Part shown: in pieces, positions 2,706 through 38,424 of the stretch
How the letters are laid out: the number at the start of each line of letters is the position of its first letter
Numbering within the stretch: the stretch's first letter is position 1
Virus record (IMG/VR): IMGVR_UViG_3300009011_000001
Coordinates: 184,575-248,574 of that record
DNA length: 64,000 bases
Reading direction: 5' to 3' (one strand)
The notes under the pieces: model-generated
Told to the model about the DNA's origin: nothing
Database searches by the model: none
The model's input: the letters and a program-made list of their open reading frames with translations, nothing else
Position numbers and translations under genes: made by a program

Positions 2706-3470
2706 ATGAAGTACCTTCACCCGGAAGATGCGGAAAGAATCGAGATCCTGAAAAACAAAAGCGATCGGGAGCTGGTTCCTGCAGAGTTGTTGATTAAACG
2801 TGTGATCAATTTCGACCACACTTACGAATACAGTGATGACATCAATGTCTATCACACCTGGTCTGCCAAAGAAAAAGAACTGCGCCAAGACCTGCTGGAA
2901 AGTGACTTGATCAATGCGGAGGTGAAAGCCCTCGCACTCAAGGCACTCAAGAATACAGTCAGTCACGAACCACTGCAGCAGTTGGTCGACCGGTATCCGA
3001 ACATCAAGTACGAGCACTACGGTCCAACTGGCTTCACCAAACTTCTCGAAGAAAAAGGTGATGAATACACCGAGCGCGCAATTGAGACGCTACGAGAACT
3101 TGGAAGTCTGATTGATGAATTACCTCCGGCATTATATCCGGGTTGGTTCATCATGACTCCGGCGACGCCGCACCAGAAGATCATGCGCGACTACGCAAGA
3201 AGTGACACCGGCCGCGATTCGTGGTACGGGTACGCATTACCGAAACCGCTCCACGATCGCATCTGGAACTTCTTCGACAAATGCATGTTCCAGAAAGAAG
3301 GTTGGAAAACCATTGTTGAAACCTACGAGTTGGCGAGAGCCAAATCTGCAGGCGTAAACTATGGTCTCCAGTACAACGTATCTGATGACGCACCGGCTAA
3401 ATACACCGGTACTCCAGCAGCTTGGTTGTACGTCCATGGGCCTGGTAAAGTCTACAGGTTCTACGTCTAA
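2706..3470 (+). CDS. Hypothetical protein
   Basis: 254-aa ORF, GGAG SD, terminator after stop. Confidence 0.8.
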   Translation: MKYLHPEDAERIEILKNKSDRELVPAELLIKRVINFDHTYEYSDDINVYHTWSAKEKELRQDLLESDLINAEVKALALKALKNTVSHEPLQQLVDRYPNIKYEHYGPTGFTKLLEEKGDEYTERAIETLRELGSLIDELPPALYPGWFIMTPATPHQKIMRDYARSDTGRDSWYGYALPKPLHDRIWNFFDKCMFQKEGWKTIVETYELARAKSAGVNYGLQYNVSDDAPAKYTGTPAAWLYVHGPGKVYRFYV

Positions 3471-3474
3471 GCAC

Positions 3475-3517
3475 AGGCCCACGGTTCGCCGTGGGTTTGC
3501 TTACCTTCTTTTTTTTT
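3475..3517 (+). terminator. Intrinsic terminator
   Basis: ggcccacgg-ttcg-ccgtgggtt followed by poly-T. Confidence 0.75.
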
Positions 3518-3544
3518 GTTTGTAGTGGCAAAATAATACTACTA

Positions 3545-3819
3545 TGTAACACGAGCTCTTTCACAAAACTTAAAGCGAGTCATTATAGTAAGTCGTTTAC
3601 GGACGACAGCTCCCTGCTGACAAGCAAACTTACAGACGGAAGTCTGACCTGGGGTTTTGTTCATCGAACATTGCCTGCCTTGTAGATGGCGCGATAGGCG
3701 AAGTAAAGCGCTCAAAGGACTCTTTGTTTTTTATCGGCTTTGAAAACGATGAGCGACATCTATTCGGCTTAACAAAAGAAATGACATAGAGGCAGGGCGC
3801 ACGCCCTGCCTCTATGCTG
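3545..3819 (+). ncRNA. Candidate structured ncRNA 2 (nested multibranch fold)
   Basis: Nested long-range helices 3579-3584/3780-3785, 3655-3661/3771-3777, 3683-3688/3757-3762, 3709-3714/3750-3755; GNRA hairpin cagac-ggaa-gtctg; TATG at 3543; hairpin-TATGC end. Confidence 0.6.
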
Positions 3820-3859
3820 TGTGTATGCATGCACTCCAAATCAAAACAGGTAATAAGAA

Positions 3860-4489
3860 ATGAAACTTTGGGACTGGCTAACAGGCAGAAACACAGCGGC
3901 AGTAATTCCGGCAAGTTCTAAGGTGGAAGAAGTTCCAACCGAGAACTATGTACCTAACCCCATCCGTCTGGTCGTGGTGAGTCTTCCTCCAGACATGTCG
4001 CCTGATCTTGCCAATGCTTTTACGGCAATGGCGGAACAGAGCGTCAGTAAAATCGGCGGCTTCGGCGGCGTATCGTGGGCTGATCCAAAAGGCGTTAAGA
4101 AGGGCGACGTACCGCTCAAGTACAAACGCACTCACCAGCCTTACATCGTCATCCGTGAGATCAAAGGGAAGGTCTACGAGACCACCTTGAACGTCGTGAT
4201 CGATCAGTTCCTGAACAACCGTACTCTGAACGACATTGGCCAATCTGGTATCAATGTGTTTGCCTATGAGTACGATGAAAGCAGTAACGACATCATCGAC
4301 GCGTGGTGGCTGCCATCTGTCTTCTACGGTCGTTCCGAAGTGGACGGTCGTCAGGATGCTCGGTTGATCTACCTCGATATCTTCGGTGAGGTTCGTGAAG
4401 GCGAGGAGTACAAACGCATTGCCCAAGAGGTCCATGCACACCGGCTTATCAAGTCGGATCTTGCCTTGGCCCTTACCGCTACTTTGTAA
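3860..4489 (+). CDS. Hypothetical protein, paralog of 5437..6123; possible diverged tail-tube-like fold
   Basis: YVPNPIRLVVV...AYEYDESSNDIIDAWW shared with the 5437 product. Confidence 0.8.
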   Translation: MKLWDWLTGRNTAAVIPASSKVEEVPTENYVPNPIRLVVVSLPPDMSPDLANAFTAMAEQSVSKIGGFGGVSWADPKGVKKGDVPLKYKRTHQPYIVIREIKGKVYETTLNVVIDQFLNNRTLNDIGQSGINVFAYEYDESSNDIIDAWWLPSVFYGRSEVDGRQDARLIYLDIFGEVREGEEYKRIAQEVHAHRLIKSDLALALTATL

Positions 4490-4513
4490 CATCTTACTTC
4501 TCGTACCTATAAT
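4484..4513 (+). promoter_or_regulatory. Possible sigma70-like promoter for ncRNA 3
   Basis: TTGTAA (4484-4489), 18-nt spacer, TATAAT (4508-4513). Confidence 0.35.
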
Positions 4514-4519
4514 TTGAAA

Positions 4520-4745
4520 AGAAACTTCTCTCCAGGGCAAATGAAGAGAGTCTTCGACCACCTGATCCTGGAAGGTCGAATCGGGCGATGGGTGTGGTCA
4601 ATGCTCGGCGGTGCATTGACTTCACAAAGGACAGTTAGGCGTGTAGAGCTTAGCCGTCAGCCACCTACGGGCATAGGTGGTTGGTGGATGGGCGTTGCAC
4701 TCCTGGGGCGGTACTGGCGCCCGACGGGGCGCCTTTTATGCCGCA
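4520..4745 (+). ncRNA. Candidate structured ncRNA 3
   Basis: Closing helix 4530-4540/4695-4708; hairpins 4553-4559/4574-4580, 4597-4604/4613-4620, 4658-4667/4674-4683; hairpin-TATGC end. Confidence 0.55.
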
Positions 4746-4802
4746 ATAGTATGAAGATCCCATGTTGAGATCTTTGTTCTACCAATCGCCGAGGATATAT
4801 CC

Positions 4803-5327
4803 ATGAAGGTCAATATCACGCTGACGCCACTGGCTAACGTATTGGCGGCTATCAACGCTGCTAACACCGCAACCAGCACCAACATCACCGAGTCGCAAGT
4901 TACTGCGGCTGCTCCAACCACCGCTGCCGGTACCGGCGGTCGTAACACCAGCGTTGTTCTGACCGGTATCGATGGTCAGGGCATCGAAGGTTCCCGTACC
5001 TTCTCGTACACCCGTCAATCTCTGGCTTCTGGTGCCGTGGCCTCCACCGCTCCTGCCAGCGTTCTGGTCGCTGAAGGCGACAATCAGGCTGCTTCGGTAA
5101 CCAAGGTTGCCACCGCTCTGGGCCTGTTGGCTTCGGAATTTGACGCCAGTGCCTACACCGCACCGGTCGACCAAACCACTCCTGGTACCGTGACCATCAC
5201 CGCAAAAACCAGCAGCTTGCTGTACGTCGGCAGCCGCGTTGTTCCTCTGAACTTCGCTGACGAAGACGTAGCCTTCGCTACCGTGGCTCCGGTGACTGAC
5301 GCCGACGGCTTCGACCCTGAAGCCTAA
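4803..5327 (+). CDS. Virion fibre-family structural protein (single-domain type)
   Basis: NT...G...Y-x-R-x-x-L domain, SLLYVG, C-terminal FATVAPVTDADGFDP. Confidence 0.8.
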   Translation: MKVNITLTPLANVLAAINAANTATSTNITESQVTAAAPTTAAGTGGRNTSVVLTGIDGQGIEGSRTFSYTRQSLASGAVASTAPASVLVAEGDNQAASVTKVATALGLLASEFDASAYTAPVDQTTPGTVTITAKTSSLLYVGSRVVPLNFADEDVAFATVAPVTDADGFDPEA

Positions 5328-6647: not shown

Positions 6648-7193
6648 TCATGCTGGATCGAAACCAAGAGCATCGGTAACCGGAGCCACCGTTGCAAATG
6701 GAATTGGGGCATTGATGATGACCTGAGTCCCGTTCACGTAATAGAACGAGGTAGGTTTGATCTTCAATGTAATCTGCCCACCCGGCGCAGCTATGGTACT
6801 GTTGATGACATCTCGTTGCTCAAGAGCCAAACCGAACTTCGTGTTGATCGCCGACAAGGCTGAGAACACATCCGCATAATTCCCCGAAAGAGTCATGTCC
6901 TTCCCTTGGAACGGAACGGCAATATCTACTCGGTTATAGCGGAAGGTATACGTTCCCTTATAGCCCTTGCCGGCAACCGCGGTCATGAGCACAGTAGTGT
7001 TGAACAGCGTATCGCCAGAACTAACGGTGAGACCGCTGAACGTCACTTGGTTGGCCTGAATCGAAGTCCCTTGCTCTTTGTTAACTGCAGCAAGAATACC
7101 GACTGACCCAGCAACCGAGAACGGCGGCAGGTTGCTCAGGCCGTACATGGCCCACACATCCGCAGAACGGATTACAAACTTTGGGTTCGCCAT
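6648..7193 (-). CDS. Virion fibre-family structural protein (single-domain type)
   Basis: GYKGTYTFRYNRVDI; C-terminal FATVAPVTDALGFDPA. Confidence 0.8.
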   Translation of the reverse strand: MANPKFVIRSADVWAMYGLSNLPPFSVAGSVGILAAVNKEQGTSIQANQVTFSGLTVSSGDTLFNTTVLMTAVAGKGYKGTYTFRYNRVDIAVPFQGKDMTLSGNYADVFSALSAINTKFGLALEQRDVINSTIAAPGGQITLKIKPTSFYYVNGTQVIINAPIPFATVAPVTDALGFDPA

Positions 7194-25067: not shown

Positions 25068-25118
25068 GACATACAGCCAGCCCTTGCGGGCTGGCTGTAT
25101 GCTTGTTCTTTTTTTTTG
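25068..25118. terminator. Bidirectional hairpin-TATGC terminator
   Basis: catacagccagccc-ttgc-gggctggctgtatg followed by poly-T. Confidence 0.8.
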
Positions 25119-37383: not shown

Positions 37384-38424
37384 TTAATGACTGAAGAGTG
37401 GGAGGACCGAGGACTGGTTGAAAGGATTGTTGCCGGGCACTTTACTGCTGGCGTACTTATAACCAATCTTGATAATGCCTGTCAGGTTGTTGCACGCATC
37501 GCCCAGCTCAAGTGCTAAAACCCAGTTGTAACCGGCGTTCTCCAGCGATTGATCTTTCGATACAAAACCGTTGTAGAGAACCTTCGCACCAAAGAGGTTG
37601 AAGGGGGCGACTTCAAGAACGGCCACCCATTTATCGCCGGTCAAAATCGACAGAATCTCTGGCAGATAAGGGGCGATGCTGATCTGCCCACCGACTGGCA
37701 CGCTATTCAGCAGACCTTGCACGGCATGCCGCTGCGCGAGATCCGGAAACTGCTCACGGCTTACATAGAGTTCGCCTTTAGGGATCAGCAGATCCACAGG
37801 CGGAAGGTCCATGTTACCGTCGGTGTAGAACTCACGCAGATCCAACAGCGAATCAATCGGATTACCAAAGCTCTGGATTGCTCGGCGCGTCTGCACTTGG
37901 ACTTCGCCAAAGAAGATCAGGTGCGTCTGCTTAAACGTAAGCTTGTAGTTGCGGTTATCCAGATAGCCAGGCGGTGGCATCTCGATCGGTGGTTGTGGTT
38001 CTTCATCCTCGCCCTCAAAAGCAGGGATGTCGGTAACCGGTGTGATGTCGGGGAACGATTGGCTGATCAGTTCGAGCGTGATGAACTCAGGCTCAATGAA
38101 GAGGCCGTATTGCTCAAAGATCGCGTTACAGATATCGACGTCGGTGTAACCAGCAACGTAGATACTGATCGGCTGACCCCGCAAGAAGAGCGAAGGCTCA
38201 ACCCGCATGTAGGCCATGATCTCCTTCTCATCCGACCAGCCCATTTCTGGCGCAAAGCTGACCTCGATTTCAGTGAGACCAGTTTCGTCCATCGTGCTAG
38301 GATTACCGAAGACCAATTGGTCTGGTCTCAGAGCACGGTTGTTGTGCTCGTTGATGTAATCCACCAACAAGTCTTTACTCTTCTTTCCAAACCGGCCCAA
38401 TCGTGAATCTCGCCGATGTTGCAT
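37384..38424 (-). CDS. Virion fibre-family structural protein (two-domain type with insertion)
   Basis: LVFGNP, YMRV, FNLFGAKVLYNG...YNWVLALEL. Confidence 0.75.
   Translation of the reverse strand: MQHRRDSRLGRFGKKSKDLLVDYINEHNNRALRPDQLVFGNPSTMDETGLTEIEVSFAPEMGWSDEKEIMAYMRVEPSLFLRGQPISIYVAGYTDVDICNAIFEQYGLFIEPEFITLELISQSFPDITPVTDIPAFEGEDEEPQPPIEMPPPGYLDNRNYKLTFKQTHLIFFGEVQVQTRRAIQSFGNPIDSLLDLREFYTDGNMDLPPVDLLIPKGELYVSREQFPDLAQRHAVQGLLNSVPVGGQISIAPYLPEILSILTGDKWVAVLEVAPFNLFGAKVLYNGFVSKDQSLENAGYNWVLALELGDACNNLTGIIKIGYKYASSKVPGNNPFNQSSVLPLFSH

What the first reader, a model, noticed from the sequence alone, without database searches (positions are those of the whole stretch)
3545..3819. Candidate novel ncRNA 2: nested multibranch architecture like a ribozyme or large structured RNA
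Seen: a 390-nt gap with no credible gene, lying between a poly-T terminator and a hairpin-TATGC element. Properly nested long-range helices (gtcatt/aatgac, ttttgtt/aacaaaa, tagatg/catcta, cgctca/tgagcg) enclose local hairpins. A 5' domain closed by gtaag/cttac holds tcgt/acga and cagc-tccct-gctg, followed by a GNRA hairpin cagac-GGAA-gtctg. It is preceded by AAAATAATACTACTATG, whose TATG matches the phiKZ late-promoter core. Inference: a late-expressed structured RNA that could be catalytic, virion-associated or a protein sponge.
Basis: partly seen in the sequence, partly recalled or inferred. Interest (0 to 1): 0.78.

Follow-up and report, generated by a model that had tools for sequence, protein, structure and literature searches.

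The report
Conserved structured RNA in jumbo phage
The gap holds a real, strongly conserved non-coding RNA of about 275 bases, one of two lying side by side, in a small group of uncultured phiKZ-like giant phages.

Summary
The 389-nt gap (3471-3859) is real and non-coding.

The region is still functional. I recovered ten related copies from metagenomic jumbo-phage contigs. The element is 67-88% identical to the window, while third codon positions of the flanking genes are 32-66% identical. No ORF is conserved.

A covariance-model alignment gives 91% of cells paired and 18 pairs changed on both sides (shuffle mean 9.1, 0/500). About 10% of paired cells are G-U, which points to a plus-strand RNA.

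The conserved layout has six parts:
- an invariant TATG (the phiKZ late-promoter core);
- an unpaired leader;
- a linker;
- a hairpin plus TATGCTG that matches the published phiKZ terminator motif.

A second, truly multibranched conserved RNA lies at 4494-4743. In distant relatives the two RNAs are adjacent, so the 209-aa gene between them is an insertion.

No Rfam family matches. Function is unknown. I favour a discrete phage ncRNA gene over a cis-acting leader. Nothing supports catalysis.

The parts
3478..3517 (+). Terminator of the upstream 254-aa gene: hairpin CCCACGG-ttcg-CCGTGGG (3478-3495), then a T9 run (3509-3517). It marks the 5' limit of the unit.
   Evidence: Sequence. The stem is invariant in all relatives; the loop varies in L011.
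3520..3546 (+). Conserved promoter-like stretch ending in TATG (3543-3546). By analogy with phiKZ late promoters, the predicted start is G3546.
   Evidence: ACTAnTATGTA is invariant in 11 copies. In phiKZ the late promoter core is TATG with +1 at the G (PMC4666361). The motif does not recur in the window, so its promoter class is inferred, not shown.
3546..3574 (+). Conserved, unpaired 5' leader (GUAACACGAGCUCUUUC...). It carries a 4-5-nt indel between lineages (the window lacks these bases).
   Evidence: Invariant TATGTAnnACGAGnTCTTT. The only helix predicted for it (helix 1) is not kept: 55.8% of cells paired.
3575..3625 (+). Stem-loop 1: GC/GC closing pairs, then UCAUUA/UGCUGA, AGU/GCU, and the apical GUCGUU-UACG-GACGAC. 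It contains the invariant CAGCUCCCUG.
   Evidence: Helices 2-4: four pairs changed on both sides, 85-100% of cells paired. The same architecture was predicted independently in two clades.
3633..3646 (+). Stem-loop 2: CAGAC-NNNN-GUCUG, with an invariant stem and a freely varying tetraloop (GGAA only in the window).
   Evidence: helix 5: 5 invariant pairs.
3652..3676 (+). Stem-loop 3: GGG(U/C)..UGUUC-NNN-GAACA..GCCU.
   Evidence: Helix 6 (96.8% of cells paired). In the MAFFT/alifold alignment one pair reads UA:5, AU:2, CG:2.
3677..3768 (+).
   Evidence: Helices 7-10. Helix 8 has 7 of 10 pairs changed on both sides and 98.2% of cells paired. Clade C reads CCAAACG/CGUUUGG and L015 has a further version. 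A 14-nt deletion in L015 removes exactly the apical hairpin.
3769..3784 (+). Variable, unpaired linker.
   Evidence: Poorly conserved columns.
3785..3819 (+). phiKZ-type terminator: 14-bp hairpin CATAGAGGCAGGGC-gcac-GCCCTGCCTCTATG followed by CTG. It is one copy of a palindromic hairpin-TATGC element that recurs at gene ends.
   Evidence: Three pairs covary (helix 11). At least 10 similar elements lie 30-50 nt after stop codons in the window. It matches the published phiKZ terminator motif, a GC hairpin plus TTAT[G/T]YYGT (bioRxiv 10.1101/2023.10.13.562163).
3860..4489 (+). 209-aa ORF of unknown function. It is a lineage-specific insertion that separates the two RNA modules.
   Evidence: Present in the window, L006, L007 and L008. 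Absent from L011, L012, L013, L015, L016 and L024, where the two modules abut. No Pfam, PHROG or Atlas lead.
4484..4743 (+). Second conserved structured RNA ('module 2'). It has a promoter-like TTGTAA-18-TATAAT (4484-4513), a multibranched body (4521-4687, closed by CCACC/GGUGG with four hairpins inside) and a terminator GGCGCCC-gacg-GGGCGCC plus TTTTATGCCG (4716-4743).
   Evidence: 71-94% identical to relatives. 94.1% of cells paired and 18 pairs changed on both sides, 0/500 shuffles. A distant homologue lies at L168:28-311, 37.5 bits, E 4.7e-12. Fold z-scores are -1.1 to -3.0 on the + strand.

Best explanation
Window 3543-3819 is a gene for a non-coding, structured RNA of about 275 nt. It is the first of two adjacent RNA genes (the second is at 4494-4743) conserved in a small clade of uncultured phiKZ-related jumbo phages.

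Shown:
- The sequence is under strong purifying selection and is not protein-coding.
- It folds on the + strand into an unpaired conserved leader, four stem-loops kept by compensatory changes, and a terminal hairpin of the genome's standard terminator type.

Inferred:
- Transcription starts at the invariant TATG (G3546), made by the phage's non-virion RNA polymerase as at phiKZ late promoters.
- It stops at the hairpin-TATGC terminator, releasing a discrete RNA.
- The RNA acts as RNA. Given its sequence-invariant stems, loops and junctions, it most likely binds a phage or host protein as a scaffold, decoy or regulator, rather than acting by antisense pairing or catalysis.
For: Conservation:
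- Ten related copies were recovered.
- Module 1 is 67-88% identical to the window. Flanking-gene third codon positions are 32-66% identical, and the upstream protein falls to 44-45% identity.

Non-coding:
- No ORF is shared.
- Indels are of 1, 2, 4-5 and 14 nt.
- Variable columns by position mod 3 are 41/43/45 of 81 each.

Structure:
- RNAalifold run separately on two clades gives the same architecture.
- On the covariance-model alignment, 91.1% of cells pair and 18 pairs changed on both sides, against a shuffle mean of 9.1 (0/500) and 2-6 when the partners are slid.
- Helix 8 exists in at least three sequence versions.

Strand:
- About 77 of about 770 paired cells are G-U, by my count. These would be A-C mismatches on the other strand.
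- All neighbouring genes are on the + strand.

Boundaries:
- A terminator lies upstream and the TATG is invariant.
- The 3' hairpin matches the phiKZ terminator motif. Such hairpins otherwise sit 30-50 nt after stop codons, whereas here one follows non-coding sequence.
- TATG occurs at 4.0 per kb in intergenic DNA against 0.84 per kb in coding DNA.

Context:
- The phage is phiKZ-related.
- Precedents exist: phiKZ and 201phi2-1 express sRNAs from a start site followed shortly by a terminator (PMC11512511; PMC8545117).
- The unit stayed intact when a gene was inserted downstream of it.
Against: - There are no expression data. The promoter is inferred from a 4-nt core, and the flanking motif is unique in the window.
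- The thermodynamic signal of the body is weak (z -0.06 to -2.4).
- Only 11 sequences from about 4 lineages were available, and the counted alignment was fitted to the model's structure. Both inflate the pair counts.
- Several stems are invariant and so give no information.
- No partner or target was found. The conserved unpaired segments have no better complementarity to 67 translation-start regions of the window than shuffled controls, and the adjacent 254-aa protein has no recognisable fold.
- A read-through or cis-acting role fits the same anatomy.
Confidence: 0.55

Rival explanations
1. Cis-acting leader. The structured RNA is the 5' untranslated part of the operon that follows (module 2 and the DUF7941 virion-protein genes; in the window's clade also the 209-aa gene). 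It would control how much transcription passes the built-in terminators, by attenuation or by processive antitermination as with HK022 put or EAR RNAs.
For: - It lies on the same strand as, and directly upstream of, virion structural genes.
- Each module ends in a terminator, so downstream expression needs read-through or a new start.
Against: - About 240 nt of sequence-constrained structure, more conserved than the neighbouring proteins, is far more than known attenuators or put/EAR elements need.
- No alternative terminator/antiterminator pairing is conserved. The only long-range helix fails.
- Module 2 has its own conserved promoter-like sequence.
- The TATG at the 3' foot of the hairpin could itself restart transcription.
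Confidence: 0.27
2. Self-cleaving or otherwise catalytic RNA.
For: The element is a conserved structured RNA with invariant unpaired nucleotides. Catalysis cannot be excluded by sequence alone.
Against: - No match to any ribozyme or intron model in Rfam 15, even at E <= 10. This was tested on the window and on the contiguous 680-nt form in L016.
- The conserved fold is a row of independent hairpins with no conserved junction or pseudoknot.
Confidence: 0.04
3. A DNA-level element, such as a replication origin, a packaging site or an array of protein-binding sites, rather than an RNA.
For: It is a long, highly conserved non-coding stretch in a jumbo phage whose origin and pac sites are unknown. 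The sequence invariance of some stems could reflect DNA-binding sites.
Against: - Changes preserve base pairing, including many G-U pairs that work only in + strand RNA.
- The + strand folds more stably than the - strand for module 2.
- There are no iterons or direct repeats.
- The unit is framed by transcription signals.
Confidence: 0.05
4. A missed small protein gene.
For: One frame is open for 64-65 codons in the window and in L018.
Against: - That frame has no start codon and no Shine-Dalgarno sequence.
- It is broken by 1-, 2- and 14-nt indels in L008, L015 and clade C.
- Variation shows no 3-base periodicity.
Confidence: 0.02

Closest known systems
Jumbo-phage sRNAs mapped by ONT-cappable-seq and Grad-seq. 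Examples are the 11 sRNAs of 201phi2-1 including sRNA005, the phiKZ sRNA upstream of gp182, and the ~100-nt phiKZ RNA between PHIKZ297 and PHIKZ298 (PMC11512511, PMC8545117).
   Same: It is a non-coding transcription unit of a phiKZ-like phage: a start signal followed closely by a phiKZ-type terminator, in an intergenic or 5'UTR position next to structural genes, conserved among related phages, with unknown function.
   Different: - No sequence relation: blastn against 50,697 phage records finds nothing.
- The phiKZ gp181-gp182 gap is only 55 nt and lies in another gene context.
- This RNA is larger (about 275 nt, against under 250 nt by the definition used there) and has four covarying stem-loops.
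- It is paired with a second RNA of about 250 nt.
- Its expression has not been observed.
phiKZ conserved terminator motif: a GC-rich hairpin followed by TTAT[G/T]YYGT (bioRxiv 10.1101/2023.10.13.562163).
   Same: The 3' end of the element (3785-3822, hairpin plus cTATGCTGT) and of module 2 (hairpin plus TTTATGCCG) fit the motif. Similar elements follow at least 10 genes in the window.
   Different: In this genome many copies are long perfect palindromes (CAGCATAnA...TnTATGCTG) that read the same on both strands. Termination itself was not tested.
phiKZ late promoter, TATG with +1 at the G (PMC4666361).
   Same: An invariant TATG lies at the 5' edge of the conserved block, with conserved sequence just downstream, as that promoter is reported to need.
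   Different: Only a 4-nt core is shared. The start site is not mapped. Whether this phage's polymerase uses TATG is unknown, although TATG is 5-fold enriched in intergenic DNA.
Large 'ornate' phage-associated RNAs GOLLD and ROOL (Rfam; bioRxiv 10.1101/2024.12.08.627333).
   Same: These are large, highly conserved structured RNAs of unknown function carried by phages.
   Different: - No match to their Rfam models.
- This RNA is much smaller.
- It is not next to tRNA genes: none are found in the 64-kb window.
- Module 1 is a simple row of hairpins.
Processive antitermination RNAs (HK022 put, EAR). Cited from general knowledge.
   Same: These are structured RNAs placed between a promoter and terminators, upstream of late or structural operons.
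   Different: Those are 70-120 nt with defined two-hairpin folds and have been shown to bind RNA polymerase. There is no similarity and no test here.

Membership tests
Any curated RNA family (Rfam 15, 4227 models) | Covariance-model score at or above the family's gathering threshold | tested here: not met
   No hit at gathering threshold in the whole window. At E <= 10, only short chance hits to the terminal hairpin at 11-19 bits, against thresholds of 45-440. The contiguous 680-nt form in L016 gives one chance miRNA hit.
Self-cleaving ribozymes and group I/II introns | Match to a ribozyme or intron model; for introns, interruption of a host gene | tested here: not met
   No such Rfam hit. The element lies after a stop codon and a terminator, not inside a gene.
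Self-cleaving ribozymes | Site-specific self-cleavage in vitro | not testable with these tools
   Needs a bench assay.
tRNA / tmRNA | Cloverleaf or tmRNA detected by ARAGORN | tested here: not met
   0 genes in the 64-kb window.
Structured non-coding RNA (generic criteria) | Sequence conserved beyond neutral expectation, with no conserved ORF | tested here: met
   67-88% identity against 32-66% at the third codon positions of flanking genes. ORFs are not shared. No 3-base periodicity.
Structured non-coding RNA (generic criteria) | Base pairs kept by compensatory changes, above controls | tested here: met
   18 pairs changed on both sides, against a shuffle mean of 9.1 (0/500) and 2-6 in slid controls. 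The same fold is predicted independently in two clades. Caveat: 11 sequences, and the alignment was fitted to the model.
   They keep 1-4 of 6, 3-5 of 7, and 2-6 of 6 pairs (4 of 6 in seven of the ten relatives). The model's own long-range helix is 55.8% paired.
GNRA-tetraloop hairpin | Loop conserved as GNRA | tested here: not met
   GGAA occurs only in the window. Elsewhere the loop is TCAC, TAAC, TCGC, TTAA, TTTG, CTCA or TTCA.
phiKZ-type terminator | GC-rich hairpin followed by TTAT[G/T]YYGT | tested here: met
   3785-3816 is a 14-bp hairpin followed by cTATGCTGT (one mismatch in TTAT). Module 2 has a hairpin followed by TTTATGCCG.
phiKZ-type terminator | Transcripts end there | not testable with these tools
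   No transcriptome exists for this uncultured phage.
phiKZ late promoter | TATG overlapping the start site | tested here: inconclusive
   TATG is present and invariant in 11 copies, and TATG is enriched in intergenic DNA. But 4 nt is not specific, and the extended motif is unique in the window.
Jumbo-phage start-to-early-terminator sRNAs (201phi2-1 / phiKZ) | Mapped start site and termination site less than 250 bp apart, with enriched reads | not testable with these tools
   The definition is experimental (PMC11512511). The predicted unit here is about 275 nt.

The most novel reading that the evidence does not exclude
The two adjacent RNAs (about 275 nt and about 250 nt) are more conserved than the proteins around them. 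They could be dedicated components of an unknown ribonucleoprotein or RNA-only machine of nucleus-forming jumbo phages. For example, it might regulate or decoy the non-virion RNA polymerase, or act as an RNA partner in mRNA export or virion assembly. That would be a new functional class of phage RNA, not just another regulatory sRNA.
Probability: 0.15. Interest if true: 0.8.

Novelty: new variant of a known kind. Interest (0 to 1): 0.55.

Why it matters
Non-coding RNAs of jumbo phages are almost unexplored. A handful of small RNAs have been seen in phiKZ and 201phi2-1, and none has a known function.

This locus offers two sizeable RNAs with covariation-supported folds. They sit in tandem and evolve more slowly than the neighbouring protein genes across lineages whose flanking protein is only 44% identical. 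That level of constraint usually marks an RNA with a specific molecular partner.

The covariance models built here (R1, R2) are a concrete starting point for finding the family in other datasets and for bench work on a cultivable relative.

The finding also shows that the 'hairpin-TATGC' signal of this phage is the phiKZ terminator motif, which helps annotate transcription units in uncultured relatives.

Tried and rejected
- **Known RNA family.** Rfam was run at the gathering threshold and at E <= 10 on the window and on L016, and ARAGORN on the window. Nothing matched.
- **Relatives among sequenced phages.** blastn of both modules and tblastn of the upstream protein against 50,697 phage records found no match.
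- **Metagenome DNA pattern scan.** My pattern CAGCTCCCTG-N12-22-TACAGAC was too loose.
- **Further scans.** IMG/VR returned only the same three contigs, and GTDB genomes returned none.
- **Homologues of the downstream DUF7941 protein.** 205 representatives were found. I looked up four. One carries module 2 (L168); three are paralogous contexts without the RNAs.
- **Sigma-70 promoter at 3560-3589** (TTCACA-18-TATAGT). Rejected: 1 site found against 1.3 expected, and a 4-5-nt indel changes the spacer in relatives.
- **Same RNA as the phiKZ gp182-upstream sRNA.** Rejected: the gap there is 55 nt and the gene is different.
- **Antisense targets.** The exact complement of the leader, and of CAGCTCCCTG, is not enriched in the window. 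Duplex energies against 67 translation-start regions are no better than for shuffled queries.
- **Pairing between modules 1 and 2.** duplexfold gave energies equal to the null. Only an invariant 5-nt CCCUG/CAGGG complementarity remains, as an untested lead.
- **Protein partner clue.** The AlphaFold model of the always-adjacent 254-aa protein has pLDDT 72.6 and no PDB fold match (best E 0.2). The 209-aa protein gave no Atlas lead.
- **Recurrent promoter motifs.** Neither module's upstream motif recurs in the window, and 9-mer counting gave only coding words.

Full report
**What the window is.** The window is part of IMG/VR contig IMGVR_UViG_3300009011_000001, 248.6 kb. Its large proteins are 22-36% identical to virion and head proteins of phiKZ, PhiPA3, SPN3US, Xoo-sp14 and Erwinia jumbo phages. 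It is therefore an uncultured, distant relative of the phiKZ-like jumbo phages. There is no nucleotide match to any of 50,697 deposited phage records.

**Checking the observation.** The gap is 389 nt (3471-3859), between two + strand ORFs. Upstream lies the hairpin CCCACGG-ttcg-CCGTGGG (3478-3495) and a T9 run (3509-3517). At the 3' end lies a perfect 14-bp hairpin (3785-3816) followed by TATGCTG.

The single sequence gives no statistical support for the drawn fold:
- The z-score of -4.16 for 3545-3819 falls to -0.60 once the terminal hairpin is left out.
- Body z-scores in nine homologues range from -0.06 to -2.4.
- A random 240-mer is expected to hold about seven perfect 6-bp complements (my arithmetic).
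- TACTATG is not enriched in the window: 2 found against 2.96 expected.

**Relatives.** The two flanking proteins have a handful of homologues in the 5.8-billion-protein collection. Their contigs, together with an IMG/VR pattern hit (L024), gave ten further copies of the gap in about four lineages:
- L006, L007, L008 and L018, which are close to the window;
- L011;
- L012, L013, L016 and L024;
- L015.

**Conservation.** The gap aligns along its whole length. It is 81-88% identical to the close relatives and 67-75% to the distant ones. Third codon positions of the flanking genes are 46-66% and 32-55% identical respectively. The upstream protein falls to 44-45% identity.

The region is not coding:
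- No ORF is shared.
- Indels are of 1, 2, 4-5 and 14 nt.
- Variable columns are spread evenly over the three phases, 41/43/45 of 81 each.

The region is therefore functional and non-coding.

**Structure.** RNAalifold was run separately on the window's clade and on the distant clade. Both runs predict the same architecture:
- an unpaired leader;
- SL1 (3575-3625);
- SL2 (3633-3646);
- SL3 (3652-3676);
- a long irregular SL4 (3677-3768);
- a linker;
- the terminal hairpin.

I built covariance model R1 from five sequences. It aligned all eleven copies. On that alignment, 91.1% of cells form pairs and 18 pairs changed on both sides. Shuffles average 9.1 such pairs (0/500 reach 18), and sliding the partners gives 2-6.

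Other points from the same analysis:
It reads GUAGAUG/CAUCUAU here and CCAAACG/CGUUUGG in the distant clade. L015 has a further version, and L011 carries one compensatory change within the helix.
- L015 has lost exactly the apical hairpin of SL4 through a 14-nt deletion.
- About a tenth of paired cells are G-U (my count), so the RNA is the + strand.
- Caveat: there are only eleven sequences, and the alignment is fitted to the model.

**What fails.** Every long-range closing helix fails:
- gtcatt/aatgac keeps 1-4 of 6 pairs.
- ttttgtt/aacaaaa keeps 3-5 of 7 pairs.
- cgctca/tgagcg keeps 4 of 6 pairs in seven of the ten relatives, 5 or 6 in two close ones, and 2 in L015.
- The model's own helix 1 is 55.8% paired.
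- gtaag/cttac is invariant and crosses the covarying helix 3.
- The GGAA loop is not conserved, although its stem is invariant.

The conserved fold is a row of hairpins, not a multibranched core.

**Signals at the ends.** The 3' hairpin is one copy of a recurrent element. At least ten GC-rich hairpins whose foot reads TnTATG(CTG) lie 30-50 nt after stop codons in the window. Several are perfect palindromes between convergent genes.

The element fits the conserved phiKZ terminator motif, a hairpin followed by TTAT[G/T]YYGT (bioRxiv 10.1101/2023.10.13.562163). TATG occurs at 4.0 per kb in intergenic DNA against 0.84 per kb in coding DNA, and TATGC at 2.0 against 0.19 (using a crude gene set).

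At the 5' edge, ACTAnTATGTAnnACGAGnTCTTT is invariant in all copies. TATG with +1 at the G is the phiKZ late-promoter core, and downstream sequence is needed for its activity (PMC4666361).

The anatomy is therefore: terminator of the previous gene, then a promoter-like TATG, then about 240 nt of structured RNA, then a terminator. No transcript data exist, so the start, the stop and the timing are all inferred.

**A second RNA and an inserted gene.** The next gap (4490-4802) is also conserved, at 71-94% identity. In L011, L012, L013, L015, L016 and L024 the 209-aa gene is absent. There the two conserved blocks abut in one non-coding stretch of about 680 nt. The 209-aa ORF (3860-4489) is thus an insertion between two RNA modules.

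Module 2 (4494-4743) has these features:
- a conserved TTGTAA-18-TATAAT upstream;
- a genuinely multibranched body, closed by CCACC/GGUGG with four hairpins inside;
- a phiKZ-type terminator.

On its covariance-model alignment, 94.1% of cells pair and 18 pairs changed on both sides, with 0/500 shuffles reaching that. Model R2 also detects a much more divergent copy at L168:28-311 (37.5 bits). Module 2 folds clearly better than shuffles on the + strand (z -1.1 to -3.0).

**Comparison with known systems.**
- No Rfam family matches, including ribozymes, introns, GOLLD and ROOL. There are no tRNA or tmRNA genes.
- The nearest precedents are sRNAs of phiKZ and 201phi2-1, defined by a start site followed closely by a terminator. 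Some are conserved among giant phages, and all have unknown function (PMC11512511; PMC8545117; review PMC13282480).
- The conserved phiKZ gp182-upstream sRNA is a different thing. That gap is 55 nt and the gene is unrelated.

**Function.** I could find no target or partner:
- no excess complementarity to translation-start regions;
- no informative pairing between the modules;
- no fold or family for the adjacent 254-aa and 209-aa proteins.

I favour a discrete ncRNA gene acting through a protein partner (0.55). The reasons are that the constraint extends to invariant stems, loops and junctions over about 240 nt, that each module carries its own start-like and stop signals, and that the unit survived a gene insertion next to it.

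The alternatives, with my confidence in each:
- A cis-acting leader controlling read-through into the virion-protein genes remains a serious rival (0.27).
- Catalysis (0.04), a DNA-level element (0.05) and a missed small protein (0.02) are unlikely, for the reasons given above.

**Verdict.** It is not the nested, ribozyme-like fold. The element is a new family of jumbo-phage ncRNA, one of a tandem pair, known so far from about a dozen metagenomic contigs.

Noticed in passing
window 4484-4743: A second conserved structured RNA ('module 2'). It has a promoter-like TTGTAA-18-TATAAT, a multibranched body closed by CCACC/GGUGG with four hairpins inside, and a phiKZ-type terminator. It is better supported than the flagged element: 94% of cells paired and 18 compensated pairs. 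A distant copy lies at L168:28-311.
   Followed up: yes
window 3860-4489: The 209-aa ORF between the two RNAs is a lineage-specific insertion. It is absent from L011, L012, L013, L015, L016 and L024, where the RNAs abut. It has no Pfam, PHROG or Atlas lead. Its stop codon lies inside the conserved TTTGTAA of module 2's upstream region.
   Followed up: partly
window 1064, 6641, 17915, 25098, 29735, 35369, 45204, 45319, 46258, 48344, 57888, 63111: Recurrent GC-rich hairpins whose foot reads TnTATG(CTG), 30-50 nt after stop codons. Many are perfect palindromes between convergent genes. They match the published phiKZ terminator motif. TATG is about 5-fold, and TATGC about 10-fold, denser in intergenic than in coding DNA. 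The short contigs L018, L019 and L168 break at such hairpins.
   Followed up: partly
window 3509-3517, and just after the hairpins at 25098, 48344 and 63111: T8-T9 runs in the context CTTC-T9-G lie 7-15 nt downstream of some hairpins rather than directly against them. They may be a separate signal and not the usual U-tract.
   Followed up: no
L015:3853-4116 (aligned to window 3712-3727): A 14-nt deletion removes exactly the apical hairpin CAAAG-GACU-CUUUG of SL4 and leaves the rest of the stem intact.
   Followed up: partly
window 3612-3616 and 4533-4537: The invariant CCCUG in module 1 is complementary to the invariant CAGGG in the apical loop of module 2's first hairpin. It is only 5 nt and cannot covary, and the duplex prediction was uninformative.
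   Followed up: partly
window 3544-3549: ATG-TAA (a start codon directly followed by a stop) overlaps the invariant TATGTAA at the 5' edge. There is no Shine-Dalgarno sequence upstream.
   Followed up: no
window 4803-5327, 6648-7193, 37384-38424; L167 and L169: DUF7941 (PHROG 'virion structural protein') occurs as several paralogues in the window and as arrays of 4-6 genes in related contigs.
   Followed up: no
window 2706-3470: The 254-aa protein directly upstream is found only in the seven protein clusters whose contigs also carry the RNA. Its AlphaFold model (pLDDT 72.6, mostly helical with a C-terminal sheet) has no PDB fold match.
   Followed up: partly
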